Of a DNA stretch of 64,000 nucleotides, positions 32,933 through 48,648 are shown one piece after another. The notes under the pieces were generated by a model. That model was not told the origin of the DNA, did not search any database, and saw only the letters and a list, made by a program, of their open reading frames with translations. Every line of letters starts with the position of its first letter. The first letter of the stretch is position 1. The position numbers were made by a program, and so were the translations under genes. Origin of the DNA: Ostrea edulis (lineage: Eukaryota); the NCBI RefSeq assembly GCF_947568905.1, contig NC_079169.1:62248001-62312000 (forward strand). Direction: 5' to 3'.

Positions 32933-33114
32933 TTAAAAGGTAGGGGTATGAACCGAAGCTGTCATGTTGGTTTTAGGGAAGGTCTCCACAAATTCTCTGA
33001 ACCCTGCTTCCCATGCACGAGCTACGGCATTCATGCGATCATCCTGGTAATTCTGCACCAGAAACGTAGTGACAAAAGCAATGGTGTTATTGTAATATTC
33101 CACTTCATTTTCTC
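32933..33114 (-). CDS. NPC1 paralog exon 7 (terminal)
   Basis: ttttag|GA, ENEVEYYNNTIAFVTTFLV...AWEAGF...NMTASVHTPTF*; no GT donor at the position where NPC1 splices to the SSD. Confidence 0.85.
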
Positions 33115-36100
33115 CTAAAATAAAAATAAGAAAATATTCGTGTTTACATTTAAATATATTCTTAGATTTATATGTACATTGTATTTCCTTTCACTTTTGA
33201 GTCATGTTTTAATTTTTAAGTTACTACAAAATTATGAATGACAAAGTTGTATTTATAGCCACATCACATATTAAAAAATATTACGACAATAGATATCAGA
33301 GCAAGAAACCGTACATCTATAACACCCTTGACTTACCTCCATAACCAGCGAAGACCATGTTGGGGTATATGGTTTGATTTGACGTGGAAACACAGGAAAT
33401 GTTCAGTGTGCCATCATACGCCTGGGGATATCTACAATTAAAATCAAAGGCAATCAACAAGGAGAATTAACTCTTAGCATACTGACGTCATCACTTTATT
33501 TACGGAAACAAGTGCCCGGGGGTTTACCAAAACAGCATTCATGTCATTCTTCAGTACTATGCTAATGCAACCAAAGTCACCCCCTCCTCAACATGATGAA
33601 CCAATACAAAAACAAAGGGTCTTTACCTGAATATTAAAAAGAACAAATATAAACTGCATGTTGATGGTGGGATAAGTCTCATCAACACTTAATTCGTGTT
33701 TAACATAATCTTTTATTGGGAATTCCATTGAGAAACTGGGGCCAAAAAATGGTTGTTTTTTTTTTTAAATACTTCTTTTCAGTCCGTCAACAGTCCCCTT
33801 AAGTTACATTGATTCTAAATATAAACACACTTCATAATTCTGTACTTTCAGATATGTTACCGAACATGTGTTGCAGCAGTATATTTACTAGCATGGATTT
33901 CCATTACTGGGAAAACATCATCAGGATAGCAGAAGTATAAATGTATTCCCCTAATCATCCATATAAAAGACCATTTTATGCATCTATTTTACTTTATTTT
34001 TGTATAGGTCATCTTAATTATAAAATCTAAGGACCATGAATTTCAGAGGCACACAAGCCTAATCGGTCACCTGAGTATCAGTTAGAGGGGCTATGCAATG
34101 GAATTGTATTTAATTGTGTTTAAAAATAATTTTCTTTACCGAGTTGATTGATTGATTGTTGTTTACCGCCACACTCAACAATTTTTTCAGTTATATGGTG
34201 CCGCCCAGTTTTTGTTGGTGGAAGAGAGAACCCAGATACAATGTACCTGGGAAGAGACCACCGACCTTCATCAAGTAAACTGGGAAACTTTCTCACTTAC
34301 CGGCGCGAGCGGGATTCGAACCCGCGGGATTCGAACCCGCGCCGACAGAGGTGAGAGGCCGTGTGATGTTAAGCGCGATGCTCTAACCACTCGGCCACGG
34401 AGGTCCCTTAATTTTCAACGGGGTGTGTGGTTGCGATTGCACCCAAGAAAGGGAGAACGGTGTTGAAAACCGCAAAATGGCAAAAATTACCGTCGGTTTT
34501 AAAAACAATATTCAAACAATTTAAGGCGAGGGGTGCCACTTCATTCTAGAACATCAAGTACCTATGGTCCACGTATTGCAGCCCTATATGAGAATAGAGA
34601 ACTCCAGTCTATATGAGAATAGAGAACTCCAGTCTACATGAGAATAGAGAACTCCAGTCTATATGAGAATAGAGAACTCCAGTCTATATGAGAATAGAGA
34701 ACTCCAGTCTATATGAGAATAGAGAACTCCAGTCTACATGAGAATAGAGAACTCCAGTCTACATGAGAATAGAGAACTCCAGTCTATATGAGAATAGAGA
34801 ACTCCAGTCTATATGAGAATAGAGAACTCCAGTCTATATGAGAATAGAGAACTCCAGTCTACATGAGAATAGAGAACTCCAGTCTATATGAGAATAGAGA
34901 ACTCCAGTCTATATGAGAATAGAGAACTCCAGTCTATATGAGAATAGAGAACTCCAGTCTACATGAGAATAGAGAACTCCAGTCTATATGAGAATAGAGA
35001 ACTCCAGTCTATATGAGAATAGAGAACTCCAGTCTATATGAGAATAGAGAACTCCAGTCTATATGAGAATAGAGAACTCCAGTCTATATGAGAATAGAGA
35101 ACTCCAGTCTATATGAGAATAGAGAACTCCAGTCTAGCACAAGAATCCCTAATCCGAAAGCCATCAATTGCAAAAGTTCGGTAGAGACTTTTCTAATAAT
35201 TAATATTGATAAATGTGTGTGCACGGTTTAGTTACTTTATATTTTGGATCCAAGAAGTAGATTCTTAAAGAAATAAGGCACTTCTGCTATCTAAGTCATA
35301 TCCTAAAACAACCTGACTCTGGAGCCACGAATTAAACAATTCACATTAAACTCATGTGACGTGAAAAGTACTTCATAAGATTATCTGACTCAACAATCAC
35401 CAGATTAACGACGTGTTTTCGCAGAATCCACGTCAACTTCATTATAGTTGCCACAAAGAACTTACGAAGAACATTTTGTTAGATGATCCAGGTAGTTTGC
35501 TATGGTGAAAAATCCAAAGTCACCCATTTTGATCTTGTCTATAGCTGTGTGGTTATTTTGCCAGTATTCAAGGACACTAATTTCAGCGCAGGCTTGGCCT
35601 GTTGGTCTGTAACAAATATCCTCCAACCGGATAAGTTGATTTTCATATTTCACAGATAACTTTTTTATCATGTCTTGAAAATCTACAAGCTAAAAGCAGA
35701 ATATTATATCAGTTTAAGCAATGTTTCTTCAAAGATAAACCTACACGTTAACAGAGGTATTTTATTTCTCAGTAAAAGCCCCAACCTCTCAACTCACATA
35801 CCCCTCTCTCTCACTTTCTCTCTTTCTCTGACATGAATATAACAATTTTATTCTAAAGATATAGATATATGGAATCGATGTCTCAGTGTCTGGGTTGCCT
35901 TTACTGTGGGACATTGTATTAAAAAGAGGCCTTCAATAATCACCCAAGTTAAATGCAACAATTCTTCAATAGAAAGCTCAATCAAAGTGTTCGATTCACC
36001 TTTATATAATAAAAATAAATCGTCTTAAAGCTTTTTAGACTCAGTTTTTTTTTTCTGGCTAGAACATATCAAAGTGAAGACCCACTGAAGACCTAAAGAA

Positions 36101-47954: not shown

Positions 47955-48000
<46 letters not shown>

Positions 48001-48648
48001 CTTTGATATACTGTTTCTACAAAAATATCATTCAATGTTTTAATATTTGTACCACAATTTCTGAAATAGTACACAAATCGAATGTAACTTTTGAAATACG
48101 AAAAAAGTGTAGGTCACATGATTTAAAAAAAGAAGTACAGTGTATCAAATTTTATAAATATATTAGATAATTACAAATGCCTAAAATCGAAATATTTCAA
48201 CTTCCTATTTATATTTTTGTATACTTTAATCTTTCATTTACGTGTAACATTTAAATTCATCTATGCAGTTAAAAGATTATAAAGGAAACACGGTAATTTA
48301 CAATGTAACGAGTATACATGTACATGTAACAACGTCCTAAGATCTATCTTAAGATTTCTTGAAGTTAAGATAGTTTTGTGAAACGGTACTGCCGTATCTT
48401 ATGATTGTCATAAGTCAGATCGTAAGACACTCTTACGATCTATCTTATGACAATCTTAAGATAGTTTTGTGAAACCCAGCTCTGGAACTTAAACTCAAAC
48501 TAGTTTTTGATCAATAAATTCGCCCACAACTGAAAGTGAATTGAAATATGTAATTGATATGGTGATGCTTAATCAAATTACTAACCTTTACTGGACTTGC
48601 ACCTACTATCAGCAGAAACGCCACGGAGATCGACAGGTGCCCGAACAT
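32933..48648 (-). CDS. Transmembrane-less NPC1 paralog (signal peptide + N-terminal domain + middle luminal domain), 7 coding exons, ~466 aa, predicted soluble/secreted
   Basis: Seven GT-AG exons (63+151+553+133+224+95+182 = 1401 nt) join in frame with no internal stop. Intron phases 0,1,2,0,2,1 match NPC1 exons 1-7. NTD and MLD motifs are present, and there is no hydrophobic helix after the signal peptide. Confidence 0.88.
33337..33431 (-). CDS. NPC1 paralog exon 6
   Basis: ttgtag|A, YPQAYDGTLNISC...QTIYPNMVFAGYG, G|gtaagt. Confidence 0.85.
34143..34408 (-). mobile_element. tRNA-derived SINE (Meta-like central domain), duplicated B box
   Basis: A box TGGCCGAGTGG, B box GGTTCGAATCC twice, (CAAT)n tail; near-identical to the SINE at 60824. 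Confidence 0.85.
34586..35136. repeat. 25-bp minisatellite (~22 units) in paralog intron 5
   Basis: Unit ATATGAGAATAGAGAACTCCAGTCT. Confidence 0.97.
35466..35689 (-). CDS. NPC1 paralog exon 5
   Basis: ttttag|CTT, LVDFQD...DICYRP...GFFTIANYLDHLTKCS, TC|gtaagt. Confidence 0.9.
37840..37972 (-). CDS. NPC1 paralog exon 4
   Basis: tttcag|G, PIYRQEQ...DKEFLHL|gtaagt; 133 nt, same length as NPC1 exon 4. Confidence 0.92.
38127..38679 (-). CDS. NPC1 paralog exon 3 (NTD, TM1-TM2 deleted)
   Basis: tttcag|GT, GNTKTCCDANQL...RCPSC...NGNTPF...PCPGGSCFKGHI, AG|gtacac. Confidence 0.9.
39320..39520 (+). mobile_element. 3' fragment of the Penelope-like family
   Basis: GGTGTGACTGGTCGACAGGGGATGCTTAC...ATCCAGGGGTCCGTGTTT, also at ~27270, 50420, 51910 and 54370. 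Confidence 0.6.
39570..39885 (-). mobile_element. tRNA-derived SINE with Deu/Nin-like domain, interrupted
   Basis: Reverse complement head GGTAGCTCAGTGGTAGA...GTTCGAACC; body AAAACGGAGGTCCCGTGTC...TAAAGAAC. Confidence 0.6.
40261..42318. mobile_element. ~2.06-kb non-autonomous DNA transposon (CACCC TIRs, TA TSD) in paralog intron 2
   Basis: ta|CACCCCAAATCGTCGCCCATC ... GATGGGCGACGATTTAGGGTG|ta, with subterminal AAATCGTCGCC repeats at both ends. Confidence 0.75.
40483..42124 (+). repeat. 636-bp direct duplication (40483-41118 and 41489-42124) around a (GA)n microsatellite
   Basis: Constant offset of 1006; the ORF track shows identical peptides in both copies. Confidence 0.95.
42350..42500 (-). 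CDS. NPC1 paralog exon 2
   Basis: ttgtag|GCA, ADNHGKCVMYGQC...LCPDLYA, G|gtatag. Confidence 0.9.
42834..44381. repeat. Minisatellite of interspersed 40-bp and 27-bp units in paralog intron 1
   Basis: TGTAACAGTGAACAGAGATACTGAGTACCCGCGATACACC and TGTAACAGTGAACAGAGATACTGAGTC. Confidence 0.97.
46386..47620 (+). mobile_element. Helentron/DINE-1-like element with ~6.5 copies of a ~160-bp satellite
   Basis: TTATACCCG...CGGGTATA subterminal inverted repeat, (GTCC)n, then GGTTCCCAGAACTCCTC recurring every ~155-163 bp. Confidence 0.75.
47958..47996. repeat. (TA)n microsatellite
   Basis: Direct reading. Confidence 0.95.
48586..48648 (-). CDS. NPC1 paralog exon 1 (signal peptide)
   Basis: aaaATG, MFGHLSISVAFLLIVGASPVK, AAG|gttagt, phase 0 like NPC1 exon 1. 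Confidence 0.75.

What the first reader, a model, noticed from the sequence alone, without database searches (positions are those of the whole stretch)
32933..48648. Intact, transmembrane-less NPC1 paralog: a predicted soluble NTD+MLD sterol-handling protein
Seen: seven exons splice into an unbroken 466-aa frame with a signal peptide, the Cys-rich NPC1 N-terminal domain and the middle luminal domain. It has no TM helix, no GPI-like or KDEL tail, and 10 N-glycosylation sequons. Known: NPC1 is a 13-TM lysosomal protein whose NTD binds cholesterol and whose MLD docks NPC2 and filovirus glycoprotein. Inference: this gene keeps only the two luminal hand-off domains as a soluble fusion. It could be a secreted or lysosomal sterol carrier or scavenger (plausible for a bivalve relying on dietary sterols), a soluble relay feeding the neighbouring NPC1, or a decoy receptor. 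High divergence with no disabling lesion argues for long-term selection. I do not know of a characterised protein with this architecture.
Basis: partly seen in the sequence, partly recalled or inferred. Interest (0 to 1): 0.93.

Follow-up and report, generated by a model that had tools for sequence, protein, structure and literature searches.

The report
Expressed membrane-less NPC1 paralog in oyster
An oyster gene next to the normal cholesterol transporter NPC1 encodes only its two luminal "hand-off" domains behind a signal peptide and has no membrane segment; it is spliced, expressed and conserved under purifying selection, and similar predicted but unstudied proteins exist in other molluscs.

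Summary
Seven minus-strand exons (48648 to 32933), all with GT-AG introns, give a 466-aa frame: signal peptide, NPC1_N, a short linker, NPC1_MLD, then stop. The only hydrophobic stretch is the N-terminus. There are 10 sequons and 22 Cys.

- **Expression:** one spliced 1701-nt contig of a public run joins exon 6 to exon 7 exactly. It runs 331 nt past the stop and ends there. Its length fits exons 2-5 plus 32 nt of exon 1.
- **No hidden membrane exons:** no SSD or C-terminal NPC1 exon lies on the minus strand, in the window or nearby.
- **Orthologs:** Saccostrea echinata and S. cucullata have syntenic genes with the same exons, junction and C-terminus. Amino-acid identity is 67% and dN/dS is 0.16.
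- **Wider family:** scallops have the same fusion plus a hydrophobic C-terminal tail. Patella and Littorina have similar proteins of apparently separate origin.

All relatives carry only automatic RefSeq names, and five literature searches found no study of them. Function is inferred: a secreted or luminal glycoprotein that docks NPC2 and accepts sterol. Two sterol hydroxyl-side pocket residues are changed (W27M, N41P).

The parts
48586..48648 (-). Exon 1: ATG at 48648 and a 21-aa signal-peptide-like leader (MFGHLSISVAFLLIVGASPVK). The donor is GTTAGT in phase 0; an alternative donor lies at 48592.
   Evidence: Sequence and translation. It is the only such mini-exon within 9.5 kb upstream of e2. 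Saccostrea orthologs have an equivalent 20-22-aa leader exon. Not seen directly in RNA: the spliced contig holds 32 nt upstream of e2.
42350..42500 (-). Exon 2: start of the NPC1 N-terminal domain (ADNHGKCVMYGQC...LYAG).
   Evidence: Pfam NPC1_N 2.8e-7. Splice sites read. tblastn against S. cucullata NPC1 covers aa 25-71.
38127..38679 (-). Exon 3: the bulk of the NTD. It ends ...PLPCPGGSCFKGHIR, with the TM1, cytosolic loop, TM2 and neck coding part missing.
   Evidence: Pfam NPC1_N 3.3e-48. Sequence. The alignment shows an internal deletion relative to the full-length exon 6656-7804 that keeps the last ~6 codons and the donor.
37973..38126 (-). Intron 3, 154 nt (GT..AG). Too short to hold TM-coding sequence.
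37840..37972 (-). Exon 4: start of the MLD (PIYRQEQVVITRP...LFDKEFLHL), including the first protruding loop. It is the exon best conserved with the full-length paralog.
   Evidence: Pfam NPC1_MLD 4.4e-5, 23.8 bits, below the 27-bit cut-off on its own. 74% DNA identity to plus-strand 9080-9227. 75.5% aa identity to S. cucullata NPC1, against 38-45% for the other exons.
35466..35689 (-). Exon 5: MLD core, including the GDFGFFTIANYLDHL loop that corresponds to human F503/F504/Y506.
   Evidence: Pfam NPC1_MLD 2.8e-15. Sequence. Alignments.
33337..33431 (-). Exon 6: MLD.
   Evidence: Both borders match the spliced contig X6 record 11, to within one ambiguous G at the exon 6/7 joint.
32933..33114 (-). 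Exon 7, coding part: end of the MLD (...NMTASVHTPTF) and the TAA stop at 32935-32933. The ancestral donor site after the MLD is lost.
   Evidence: Pfam NPC1_MLD 2.1e-8. Compared with the plus-strand gene's donor at 13806/13807. Joined to e6 in the contig.
32602..32932 (-). 3' untranslated region as far as the RNA contig reaches (331 nt). No further splice.
   Evidence: X6 record 11 is collinear from 33113 to 32602 and ends there.
5021..25720 (+). Neighbouring full-length NPC1 gene (context, tail-to-tail with the short gene). All domains are present, including TM1/TM2, the SSD and the C-terminal half.
   Evidence: tblastn of S. cucullata NPC1 (P0177) covers aa 21-1330 in 21 plus-strand blocks; identity is 63-96% in 20 of them and 47% in the last.

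Best explanation
SHOWN. This is a real, transcribed, spliced protein-coding paralog of NPC1 in an oyster genome. It encodes a 466-aa protein made of a signal peptide, the NPC1 N-terminal sterol-binding domain, a ~20-residue flexible linker and the NPC1 middle luminal domain. It has no transmembrane helix, no sterol-sensing domain and no C-terminal luminal domain.

Two changes to a copy of the first seven NPC1 exons produced it:
- an in-frame deletion inside exon 3 removed the end of the Pro-rich linker, TM1, the cytosolic loop, TM2 and the neck;
- the donor site after the last MLD exon was lost, so translation stops three codons beyond the old junction.

The gene sits tail-to-tail with one full-length NPC1 and head-to-head with another. 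It has syntenic orthologs in Saccostrea and evolves under purifying selection in both domains.

INFERRED mechanism. The protein enters the secretory pathway, is N-glycosylated, and is released as a soluble luminal or extracellular glycoprotein. Possible sites are lysosomes or digestive vacuoles, the digestive-gland lumen, or haemolymph. Its MLD keeps the two protruding loops that dock NPC2 in human NPC1. Its NTD keeps the pocket entrance and hand-off residues (Q79, L175/L176-type hydrophobics, P202, F203, I205). It would therefore work as a free 'receiving module': an NPC2-type carrier docks on the MLD and passes a sterol, or a related dietary lipid, into the tethered NTD. With no membrane tunnel behind it, it holds, buffers or ferries the lipid instead of inserting it into a membrane. 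The W27M and N41P changes at the hydroxyl end of the pocket suggest altered ligand preference.
For: - **Gene model and protein features:**
- **Expression, splicing and 3' end:** run X6 has a 1701-nt minus-strand contig that joins 33431-33336 to 33113-32602. It holds 1093 nt upstream, which equals e2-e5 (1061 nt) plus 32 nt. X6 has no depth in unique intron and intergenic bins, while the DNA runs X3 and X7 are collinear through the intron. Two small RNA libraries of another study hold 16-21% of the sampled exon 3 words.
- **No TM exons:** tblastn of a full-length oyster NPC1 hits the minus strand only at aa 25-265 and 428-636. Genome-wide, NPC1_N and NPC1_MLD occur only in this three-gene cluster, and no minus-strand SSD lies near it.
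- **Orthologs:** S. echinata XP_061187964.1 and S. cucullata XP_062596321.1 share the exon borders, the junction (...CPGGSCF.G.IRPIYRQEQ...) and the end. Two transcript contigs of 1.8-2.1 kb carry ORFs of the same 472-aa length in that S. cucullata cluster. An unannotated signal-peptide exon exists in S. echinata.
- **Synteny:** the short gene lies next to a full-length NPC1 in both Saccostrea species.
- **Selection:** dN/dS is 0.16 overall, 0.15 for the NTD and 0.17 for the MLD, over 435 codons at 67% aa identity.
- **Fold:** the AlphaFold2 model of the S. cucullata ortholog has pLDDT 88.9 with two confident domains; the linker (residues 236-252) is below 50. Foldseek gives TM 0.84 to the human NTD 3GKH and 0.91 to the human MLD 5KWY_A.
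- **Conserved functional positions:**
- **NPC2 docking:** a co-fold of the S. cucullata MLD with S. cucullata NPC2 scored 0.42 against a best control of 0.01, rated 'weak support'. The runs agree in at least 94% of contacts and the partner's pLDDT is at least 82. The mark was reached by 51 of 78 solved complexes and 2 of 108 mismatched pairs. However, scores of 0.60 or under came from only 5 of those 78 solved complexes and from all 4 mismatches that passed (of 180). On eukaryotes the mark was reached by 39 of 65 solved pairs and 2 of 126 unrelated pairs.
Against: - No binding, localisation or tissue data exist; the whole mechanism is inferred by homology with human NPC1.
- W27 and N41 are replaced (M, P) in all three oyster short forms, and N86 varies (N, E, Q). 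I recall from Kwon et al. 2009 that these lie at the 3-beta-OH end of the human pocket; this is memory, not something tested here. Sterol binding may be weakened or retargeted.
- The co-fold pass is weak. A like complex (5KWY) is solved, so the score may reflect memory of that structure rather than binding by this copy.
- Junctions e1-e2 to e5-e6 were not seen directly in RNA.
- No protein of this kind from Crassostrea/Magallana appeared in the 241-768 aa search, so the gene may not be general in oysters.
- The relative orientation of the two domains is not predicted (pTM 0.58).
Confidence: 0.5

Rival explanations
1. Decoy or brake. The soluble NTD-MLD competes with the membrane NPC1 proteins for sterol-loaded NPC2, or for some other MLD ligand such as a pathogen protein. 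It would lower or tune sterol export rather than carry sterol itself.
For: The MLD loops are the best-conserved part: exon 4 is 75.5% identical to full-length NPC1, against 38-45% elsewhere. The hydroxyl-side pocket residues of the NTD have changed. There is a weak co-fold pass with NPC2. The gene lies between two full-length NPC1 genes.
Against: The NTD is under the same purifying selection as the MLD (dN/dS 0.15 against 0.17); a pure MLD decoy would not need this. The scallop relatives are tethered to a membrane by a C-terminal hydrophobic tail, which fits a surface receptor or acceptor better than a diffusible competitor. No pathogen ligand of a mollusc NPC1 is known to me.
Confidence: 0.17
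2. Neofunctionalised binding protein. The fold is kept, but the ligand is no longer a 3-beta-hydroxysterol (for example another dietary lipid or a carotenoid), or the protein serves in recognition or adhesion independently of NPC2.
For: W27M and N41P occur in all oyster short forms and N86 is variable. The oyster short clade sits on a long stem branch of 0.77. The Cys pattern at the NTD end is rearranged (CSCQDC becomes CSKTDC, plus a new CPGGSC).
Against: Q79, P202, F203, I205 and the hydrophobic 175/176 pair are kept, as are both MLD loops. The scallop short forms keep W27 and N41.
Confidence: 0.2
3. Transcribed relic. A partial duplicate of NPC1 that is expressed but has no function of its own.
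For: It arose by partial duplication and deletion next to its parent gene. Only one spliced contig from one run was laid.
Against: The frame is open over 466 codons although DNA similarity to the parent is detectable in only one exon. dN/dS is 0.16, with dS about 1.35, against a syntenic ortholog that has the same exon structure and stop position. Transcripts exist in S. cucullata too.
Confidence: 0.03
4. Mis-modelled fragment of a longer membrane protein whose remaining exons lie elsewhere, for example in the 200-N gap at 27420-27619.
For: An assembly gap lies 5 kb downstream of the 3' UTR end.
Against: The RNA contig runs from exon 7 straight through the stop codon for 331 nt and shows no further joint. 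The ancestral donor is gone. There are no minus-strand SSD or C-terminal exons in the window or nearby. Orthologs in gap-free loci of two Saccostrea species end within a few residues of the same place: same position in S. echinata, five residues later in S. cucullata.
Confidence: 0.02

Closest known systems
NPC1 / NPC1L1 / yeast NCR1 (13-TM RND-type sterol transporters; PDB 3JD8, 6W5S, 6V3F, 6R4L)
   Same: The NTD and MLD are homologous. phmmer against human NPC1 gives 2e-73, covering residues 10-256 and 394-604. Foldseek gives TM 0.84 to the NTD 3GKH and 0.91 to the MLD 5KWY_A. The exon borders match the first seven exons of the neighbouring full-length gene.
   Different: It lacks human-equivalent residues ~257-393 (TM1, cytosolic loop, TM2, neck) and everything after ~611 (SSD, C-terminal luminal domain, TM8-13). 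It has no membrane anchor and no tunnel, so it cannot itself deliver sterol to a membrane.
Predicted short 'NPC1-like' proteins of Saccostrea (XP_061187964.1, XP_062596321.1)
   Same: These are orthologs. The junction, exon structure and C-terminus are the same. They are 67-68% identical, lie next to full-length NPC1, and form a 100/100 clade with the window protein.
   Different: They come from a different oyster genus. The S. echinata model lacks its signal-peptide exon. S. cucullata ends 5 residues later. They carry automatic names only, and I found no study of them.
Scallop short NPC1-like proteins (Pecten XP_033726830.1, Mizuhopecten XP_021364302.1, Argopecten XP_069106602.1)
   Same: The architecture is signal peptide, NTD, short Pro-rich linker and MLD, with the MLD starting at the same exon border. 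The first seven exons are equivalent. They are sister to the oyster short clade in the trees, but weakly (82/59; SH-aLRT 90).
   Different: They have two extra 3' exons that encode a stalk and a hydrophobic C-terminal tail, either a GPI signal or a single-pass anchor. W27 and N41 are kept. The Pecten gene is not adjacent to the full-length NPC1; it lies 19 Mb away. An oyster-specific origin is not rejected (AU p = 0.17).
Recombinant soluble NPC1 fragments: NTD (3GKH/3GKI) and MLD 'domain C' (5F18, 5KWY with NPC2)
   Same: Each domain folds and works as an isolated soluble glycoprotein in vitro. The natural protein is in effect these two constructs joined by a flexible linker.
   Different: Those are laboratory constructs of a membrane protein. 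This is a natural gene product under selection.
Gastropod short forms (Patella vulgata XP_050411924.1, P. caerulea KAK6177466.1, Littorina saxatilis XP_070208614.1, Haliotis rubra XP_046580963.1 isoform X2)
   Same: The NTD is joined to the MLD with a 14-29-residue spacing and no TM helices.
   Different: The Patella and Littorina forms group with the full-length NPC1 of their own lineage, which points to independent origin. Some may be isoforms or incomplete gene models; I did not check this.

Membership tests
NPC1-type sterol transporter (NPC1/NPC1L1/NCR1) | Cys-rich N-terminal sterol-binding domain (Pfam NPC1_N) | tested here: met
   PF16414 at 3.3e-48 on exon 3 and 2.8e-7 on exon 2. The fold matches 3GKH with TM 0.84 in the ortholog model.
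NPC1-type sterol transporter (NPC1/NPC1L1/NCR1) | Middle luminal domain (Pfam NPC1_MLD) | tested here: met
   PF22314 on exons 4, 5 and 7. The fold matches 5KWY_A with TM 0.91.
NPC1-type sterol transporter (NPC1/NPC1L1/NCR1) | Sterol-sensing domain and RND-type 13-TM core | tested here: not met
   No hydrophobic segment beyond the signal peptide. No minus-strand SSD or Patched exons. The mRNA contig ends after the MLD.
NPC1-type sterol transporter (NPC1/NPC1L1/NCR1) | C-terminal luminal domain that pairs with the MLD | tested here: not met
   tblastn of full-length NPC1 finds nothing beyond aa 636 on the minus strand.
NPC1-type sterol transporter (NPC1/NPC1L1/NCR1) | Sterol pocket residues of the NTD (human W27, N41, Q79, N86, P202, F203, I205) | tested here: inconclusive
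   Q79, N86, P202, F203 and I205 are kept in the window protein. W27 is M and N41 is P. N86 is E or Q in Saccostrea. The list of residues is from my memory of Kwon et al. 2009.
Mollusc short NTD-MLD 'NPC1-like' proteins (Saccostrea type) | Signal peptide, NTD joined to the MLD by about 23 residues without a TM, and a stop within ~10 residues after the MLD | tested here: met
   The profile-based spacing is 23 residues in the window protein, P0001 and P0151. The tails after the MLD are 5-12 residues. Alignment.
Mollusc short NTD-MLD 'NPC1-like' proteins (Saccostrea type) | Orthology: same exon borders, synteny with full-length NPC1, and monophyly | tested here: met
   Exon maps, neighbouring genes, and a 100/100 clade.
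NPC2-docking module | Physical binding of NPC2 to the MLD loops | tested here: inconclusive
   The loops are conserved. The co-fold scored 0.42 against a best control of 0.01, rated weak support, and may reflect memory of 5KWY. No experiment.
GPI-anchored or tail-anchored variant (scallop type) | C-terminal hydrophobic segment | tested here: not met
   The window protein ends ...NMTASVHTPTF and has no hydrophobic tail. Scallop proteins have one at about residues 486-512.

The most novel reading that the evidence does not exclude
Molluscs have repeatedly cut the NPC1 'receiving module' (NPC2-docking MLD plus sterol-accepting NTD) free from the membrane transporter. It is soluble in oysters and tethered by a C-terminal tail in scallops. 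They use it as an extracellular or luminal acceptor that takes dietary sterols from NPC2-type carriers. That would be a natural, minimal, soluble version of the NPC2-to-NPC1 hand-off, and a previously unrecognised class of animal sterol carrier.
Probability: 0.3. Interest if true: 0.8.

Novelty: new variant of a known kind. Interest (0 to 1): 0.62.

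Why it matters
In the current model of lysosomal cholesterol export, NPC2 docks on the NPC1 middle luminal domain and hands sterol to the flexible N-terminal domain. The N-terminal domain then feeds a tunnel into the membrane.

A natural gene that keeps exactly these two domains and nothing else suggests that the hand-off module has a use of its own. 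The gene is expressed and has been selected over a long period. Similar proteins have appeared in several mollusc lineages.

It offers a soluble, naturally evolved system for studying NPC2-to-NTD transfer without detergent. It also points to an unstudied route of sterol handling in filter-feeding molluscs, whose sterols are thought to come largely from the diet. Practically, it shows that the automatic name 'NPC intracellular cholesterol transporter 1-like' hides proteins that cannot be transporters.

Tried and rejected
- **DNA comparison with the plus-strand gene:** this found only exon 4 (74%) plus a shared repeat, so a recent duplication is rejected.
- **Hidden TM exons:** I looked with tblastn of a full-length oyster NPC1 and with genome-wide SSD, NPC1_N and NPC1_MLD scans. 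None lies on the minus strand.
- **Single or separate origin of the oyster and scallop short forms:** the trees put them together only weakly (82/59; SH-aLRT 90). An AU test does not reject an oyster-specific origin (p = 0.17). This stays unresolved.
- **P0006 (519 aa, transcript contig):** it looked like another short form but is sister to the Sinanodonta full-length NPC1. I set it aside as a probable aberrant isoform.
- **P0152 (Solemya, 693 aa):** it keeps TM1-TM3 and is just a truncated gene model.
- **Literature:** five full-text searches (NPC1 with bivalve, oyster, scallop, soluble paralog, and genus names) found nothing on TM-less NPC1 proteins. The library is open-access only, so this is not proof of absence.
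- **The spliced 466-aa protein itself** could not be given to the search or folding tools because it has no single reference. Exon 3 and the S. cucullata ortholog P0151 were used instead.
- **Not available here:** SignalP, DeepTMHMM and GPI predictors.

Full report
**What is in the window**

The window comes from a large mollusc genome (895 Mb in 52 pieces; window = C6:62248001-62312000). It has one 200-N gap at 27420-27619.

Stop-to-stop frames and Pfam show NPC1 domains on both strands. On the plus strand a complete NPC1 gene runs from 5021 to 25720. tblastn with the Saccostrea cucullata NPC1 (P0177, 1330 aa) covers residues 21-1330 in 21 blocks; identity is 63-96% in 20 of them and 47% in the last. 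On the minus strand the same query matches only residues 25-265 (NTD) and 428-636 (MLD), between 42488 and 32954. That minus-strand gene is the one in the finding.

**Checking the observation**

I read every junction from the sequence and assembled the exons in a script. The exons are e1 48648-48586, e2 42500-42350, e3 38679-38127, e4 37972-37840, e5 35689-35466, e6 33431-33337 and e7 33114-32933. All six introns are GT..AG and the phases agree. The CDS is 1401 nt, which gives 466 aa and a TAA stop.

The protein has these features:
- A hydrophobic N-terminal leader (Kyte-Doolittle 1.8 over residues 2-20) and no other membrane-like segment.
- 22 Cys and 10 N-x-S/T sequons.
- A C-terminus ...NMTASVHTPTF with no hydrophobic or KDEL-type tail.

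Pfam gives NPC1_N at 3.3e-48 on e3 and 2.8e-7 on e2. It gives NPC1_MLD at 4.4e-5 on e4 (23.8 bits, below the 27-bit cut-off on its own), 2.8e-15 on e5 and 2.1e-8 on e7.

One small caveat concerns e1. It has a second phase-0 donor at 48592, which would give 464 aa. It is nevertheless the only signal-peptide-like ATG mini-exon in the 9.5 kb upstream of e2.

**How the membrane parts were lost**

In the full-length neighbour, one large exon (6656-7804) encodes the NTD, the Pro-rich linker, TM1, the cytosolic loop, TM2 and the neck. The next exon starts at [11 protein letters not shown].

In the short gene, exon 3 ends ...PKLPEPLPCPGGSCFKGHIR. Then comes a 154-nt intron, and exon 4 starts PIYRQEQVVIT. 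The last residues, F-K-G-H-I-R, align with the last residues of the full-length exon (F-N-S-H-F-G). The loss is therefore an in-frame deletion inside the exon that kept the donor.

Against human NPC1, the protein covers residues 10-256 and 394-604 and skips about 257-393.

At the 3' end, the full-length gene has a GAG|GTAAGT donor straight after ...NMTVSYSSE. In the short gene that donor is gone, and the frame runs into TAA TGA three codons beyond the old junction.

**Expression and the 3' end**

A search of public runs with exon 3 found two small RNA libraries of one study holding 16-21% of its sampled words. It also found five runs of 'organism A' holding 75-100%.

Runs X3 and X7 are DNA: their contigs are collinear through intron 6 and have even depth. 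Run X6 behaves as RNA: it has no depth in unique intronic and intergenic bins.

X6 contains a 1701-nt minus-strand contig (record 11):
- Positions 1094-1189 lie on 33431-33336 and positions 1190-1701 lie on 33113-32602.
- This is exactly the e6-e7 junction, with one ambiguous G.
- The contig continues through the stop codon for 331 nt and ends there, with no further joint.
- The 1093 nt upstream of e6 equal e2-e5 (1061 nt) plus 32 nt, as expected if the contig starts inside e1.

So the gene is transcribed and spliced, and its mRNA ends after the MLD. Junctions e1-e2 to e5-e6 are supported only by this arithmetic and by orthologs.

Genome-wide, NPC1_N and NPC1_MLD occur only in this cluster of three genes. 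The third is a full-length copy with an SSD, starting about 8 kb beyond the window. No SSD exon lies on the minus strand nearby. The gap at 27420 is 5 kb past the end of the transcript and is irrelevant.

**Age and selection**

DNA similarity to the plus-strand gene is detectable only in exon 4 (74%), so the duplication is old.

An exhaustive protein search with exon 3 gave one outstanding hit, P0001 (439 aa, 69% identity, E 6.6e-84). The next hit was at 39%. P0001 is XP_061187964.1 of Saccostrea echinata. S. cucullata has XP_062596321.1 (472 aa), whose cluster also holds two transcript contigs of 1.8-2.1 kb with ORFs of the same length.

Both Saccostrea proteins show the same NTD-MLD junction (...CP[GD]GSCFDG.IRPIYRQEQ...) and end at or near the same place. 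I mapped both onto their genomic loci. The exon borders and phases are the same as in the window. The S. echinata model merely lacks a signal-peptide exon, which is present 430 nt upstream.

In S. echinata the short gene lies tail-to-tail with a 1334-aa NPC1. In S. cucullata it lies head-to-head with a 1328-aa NPC1. Together these match the window's arrangement between two full-length copies.

Over 435 aligned codons, the window gene and the S. echinata gene are 67% identical. By the Nei-Gojobori method, pN is 0.19 and pS is 0.63, giving dN/dS 0.16. The values are 0.15 for the NTD and 0.17 for the MLD, and dS is about 1.35, near saturation. This is clear purifying selection on both domains.

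**Relatives elsewhere**

The same search found other proteins with only NPC1_N and NPC1_MLD: Pecten maximus, Mizuhopecten yessoensis, Argopecten irradians and Patella vulgata. A profile scan of all fetched proteins added Littorina saxatilis, Patella caerulea, a Haliotis rubra isoform and an unnamed transcript cluster.

The scallop proteins have the same first seven exons plus two more. The extra exons encode a stalk and a hydrophobic C-terminal tail, either a GPI signal or a single-pass anchor.

In maximum-likelihood trees of the NTD and MLD columns:
- The oyster short forms are a 100/100 clade on a long stem, and the scallop short forms are another.
- The two are sisters only weakly (82/59 in the careful tree, SH-aLRT 90 in the quick one).
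- The Patella and Littorina forms sit with the full-length NPC1 of their own lineage.

An AU test does not reject an oyster-specific origin (p = 0.17). The architecture has therefore arisen more than once in molluscs. Whether oysters and scallops share one origin is open.

No short form from Crassostrea/Magallana turned up. This may reflect loss or lack of annotation; proteins of the window's own genome or one very near it may also have been withheld from the search. I could not search those genomes.

**Structure and functional residues**

AlphaFold2 on the S. cucullata ortholog, with a 55-sequence alignment, gives mean pLDDT 88.9. There are two confident domains and a disordered linker (236-252, pLDDT below 50). 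pTM is 0.58, so the relative orientation of the domains is undefined. Foldseek matches the human NTD (3GKH, TM 0.84) and the human MLD (5KWY_A, TM 0.91).

In the alignments with human NPC1:
- The window protein keeps Q79, N86, P202, F203, I205 and a hydrophobic pair at 175/176.
- W27 is Met and N41 is Pro in all three oyster short forms. N86 is Glu or Gln in Saccostrea. The scallop forms keep W27 and N41.

The roles of these residues are from my memory of the NTD crystal-structure paper (Kwon et al. 2009); I did not test them here.

The MLD loops that contact NPC2 and filovirus GP in the human protein are well kept. Exon 4 is 75.5% identical to full-length oyster NPC1, against 38-45% for the other exons. 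The GFF...Y loop of exon 5 is also preserved. This agrees with note s1-311977.

**NPC2**

The genome has at least three ML-domain (NPC2-like) loci. I fetched the S. cucullata NPC2-like protein (P0287) and co-folded it with the S. cucullata MLD (residues 250-466).

- The score was 0.42 against a best control of 0.01, and the verdict was 'weak support'.
- The runs agree in at least 94% of contacts, and the partner's pLDDT is at least 82.
- The mark was reached by 51 of 78 solved complexes and 2 of 108 mismatched pairs. Scores of 0.60 or under, however, came from only 5 of those 78 and from all 4 mismatches that passed (of 180).
- On eukaryotes the mark was reached by 39 of 65 solved pairs and 2 of 126 unrelated pairs.
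- Because the human MLD-NPC2 complex (5KWY) is solved, the pass may be memory of that structure.

I count this as a slight plus only.

**Interpretation**

Shown: this is a real, expressed, selected NPC1 paralog without any membrane part, and it has orthologs in another oyster genus.

Inferred: the protein enters the secretory pathway, is glycosylated and is soluble. It keeps the platform on which NPC2 docks and the pocket that receives the sterol, joined by a flexible tether.

The most economical mechanism is a free acceptor that takes sterol, or a related dietary lipid, from NPC2-type carriers and holds or ferries it. I give this about 0.5.

Alternatives:
- A decoy or brake that titrates NPC2 (0.17).
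- A protein with a changed ligand (0.2). The W27M and N41P changes favour this, while equal constraint on both domains and the kept pocket entrance argue for a still lipid-related role.
- A functionless relic (0.03) or a mis-modelled fragment of a longer gene (0.02). Both are largely excluded by the selection, ortholog and RNA evidence.

**Novelty**

The gene family is NPC1, but this is a variant that fails the defining transporter features (SSD, TM core, C-terminal domain). Predicted orthologs and analogues are already in RefSeq under automatic 'NPC1-like' names. Five full-text searches found no description of them.

I rate it a new variant of a known kind. The architecture is not unique to this genome, and its function is untested.

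Noticed in passing
window 5021-25720 (+): A complete full-length NPC1 gene with about 21 coding blocks. It is orthologous to S. cucullata NPC1 P0177 (63-96% identity in 20 blocks, 47% in the last) and lies tail-to-tail with the short gene.
   Followed up: partly
G000:C6:62320383-62326280 (+), about 8-14 kb beyond the window's right end: A third NPC1 copy with NPC1_N, NPC1_MLD and sterol-sensing exons, head-to-head with the short gene. The NTD match has two in-frame stops in its open-frame report, which may be intron sequence or a lesion. Not examined.
   Followed up: no
window 42610-44507: A large satellite in intron 1 of the short gene. It gives long repetitive open frames (...SVSLFTVTGVSRVLSISVHCYRCIAGTQYLC...) on the minus strand.
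   Followed up: no
window 40556-41110 and 41562-42116: Two copies of a ~0.55-kb segment about 1 kb apart in intron 2, giving identical open frames. A (GA)n/(TC)n-type simple repeat lies between them at about 41390-41450.
   Followed up: no
window 34584-35136: A tandem array of a ~25-nt unit (about 22 copies) in intron 5. It blocked the first read-laying request.
   Followed up: partly
window 32146-32496 (-) and 16524-16871 (+): A high-copy interspersed repeat. The two copies are 72% alike, and it has very high contig depth in all runs. It lies just downstream of the short gene's 3' UTR and in an intron of the full-length gene. Other high-depth repeats lie at 30265-30783 and 34071-34416.
   Followed up: partly
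window ~53300-63600, mostly (-): Retrotransposon-like open frames between the short gene and the third NPC1. They include integrase-like (60011-60289), reverse-transcriptase/RNase H-like (61079-61885) and gag/protease-like (62071-63592) pieces, judged by eye only.
   Followed up: no
L001:9507-9569 (Saccostrea echinata): The RefSeq model XP_061187964.1 starts at an internal Met. An unannotated exon encoding MAMQKSIIATSLLLVAVQTL with a GTGAGT donor lies 430 nt upstream, so the real protein probably has a signal peptide.
   Followed up: yes
L005 (Pecten maximus) exons at 29164-29235 and 33041-33124: The scallop short NPC1-like gene has two extra 3' exons that encode a stalk and a hydrophobic C-terminal tail (...SSAAVPQYGIITLLTCALCTIFIRKM). 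This suggests GPI or single-pass anchoring.
   Followed up: partly
G000:C9:19807242, C5:40498846, C5:40506099: At least three NPC2-like (ML-domain) loci in the genome. Two lie 7 kb apart on opposite strands.
   Followed up: partly
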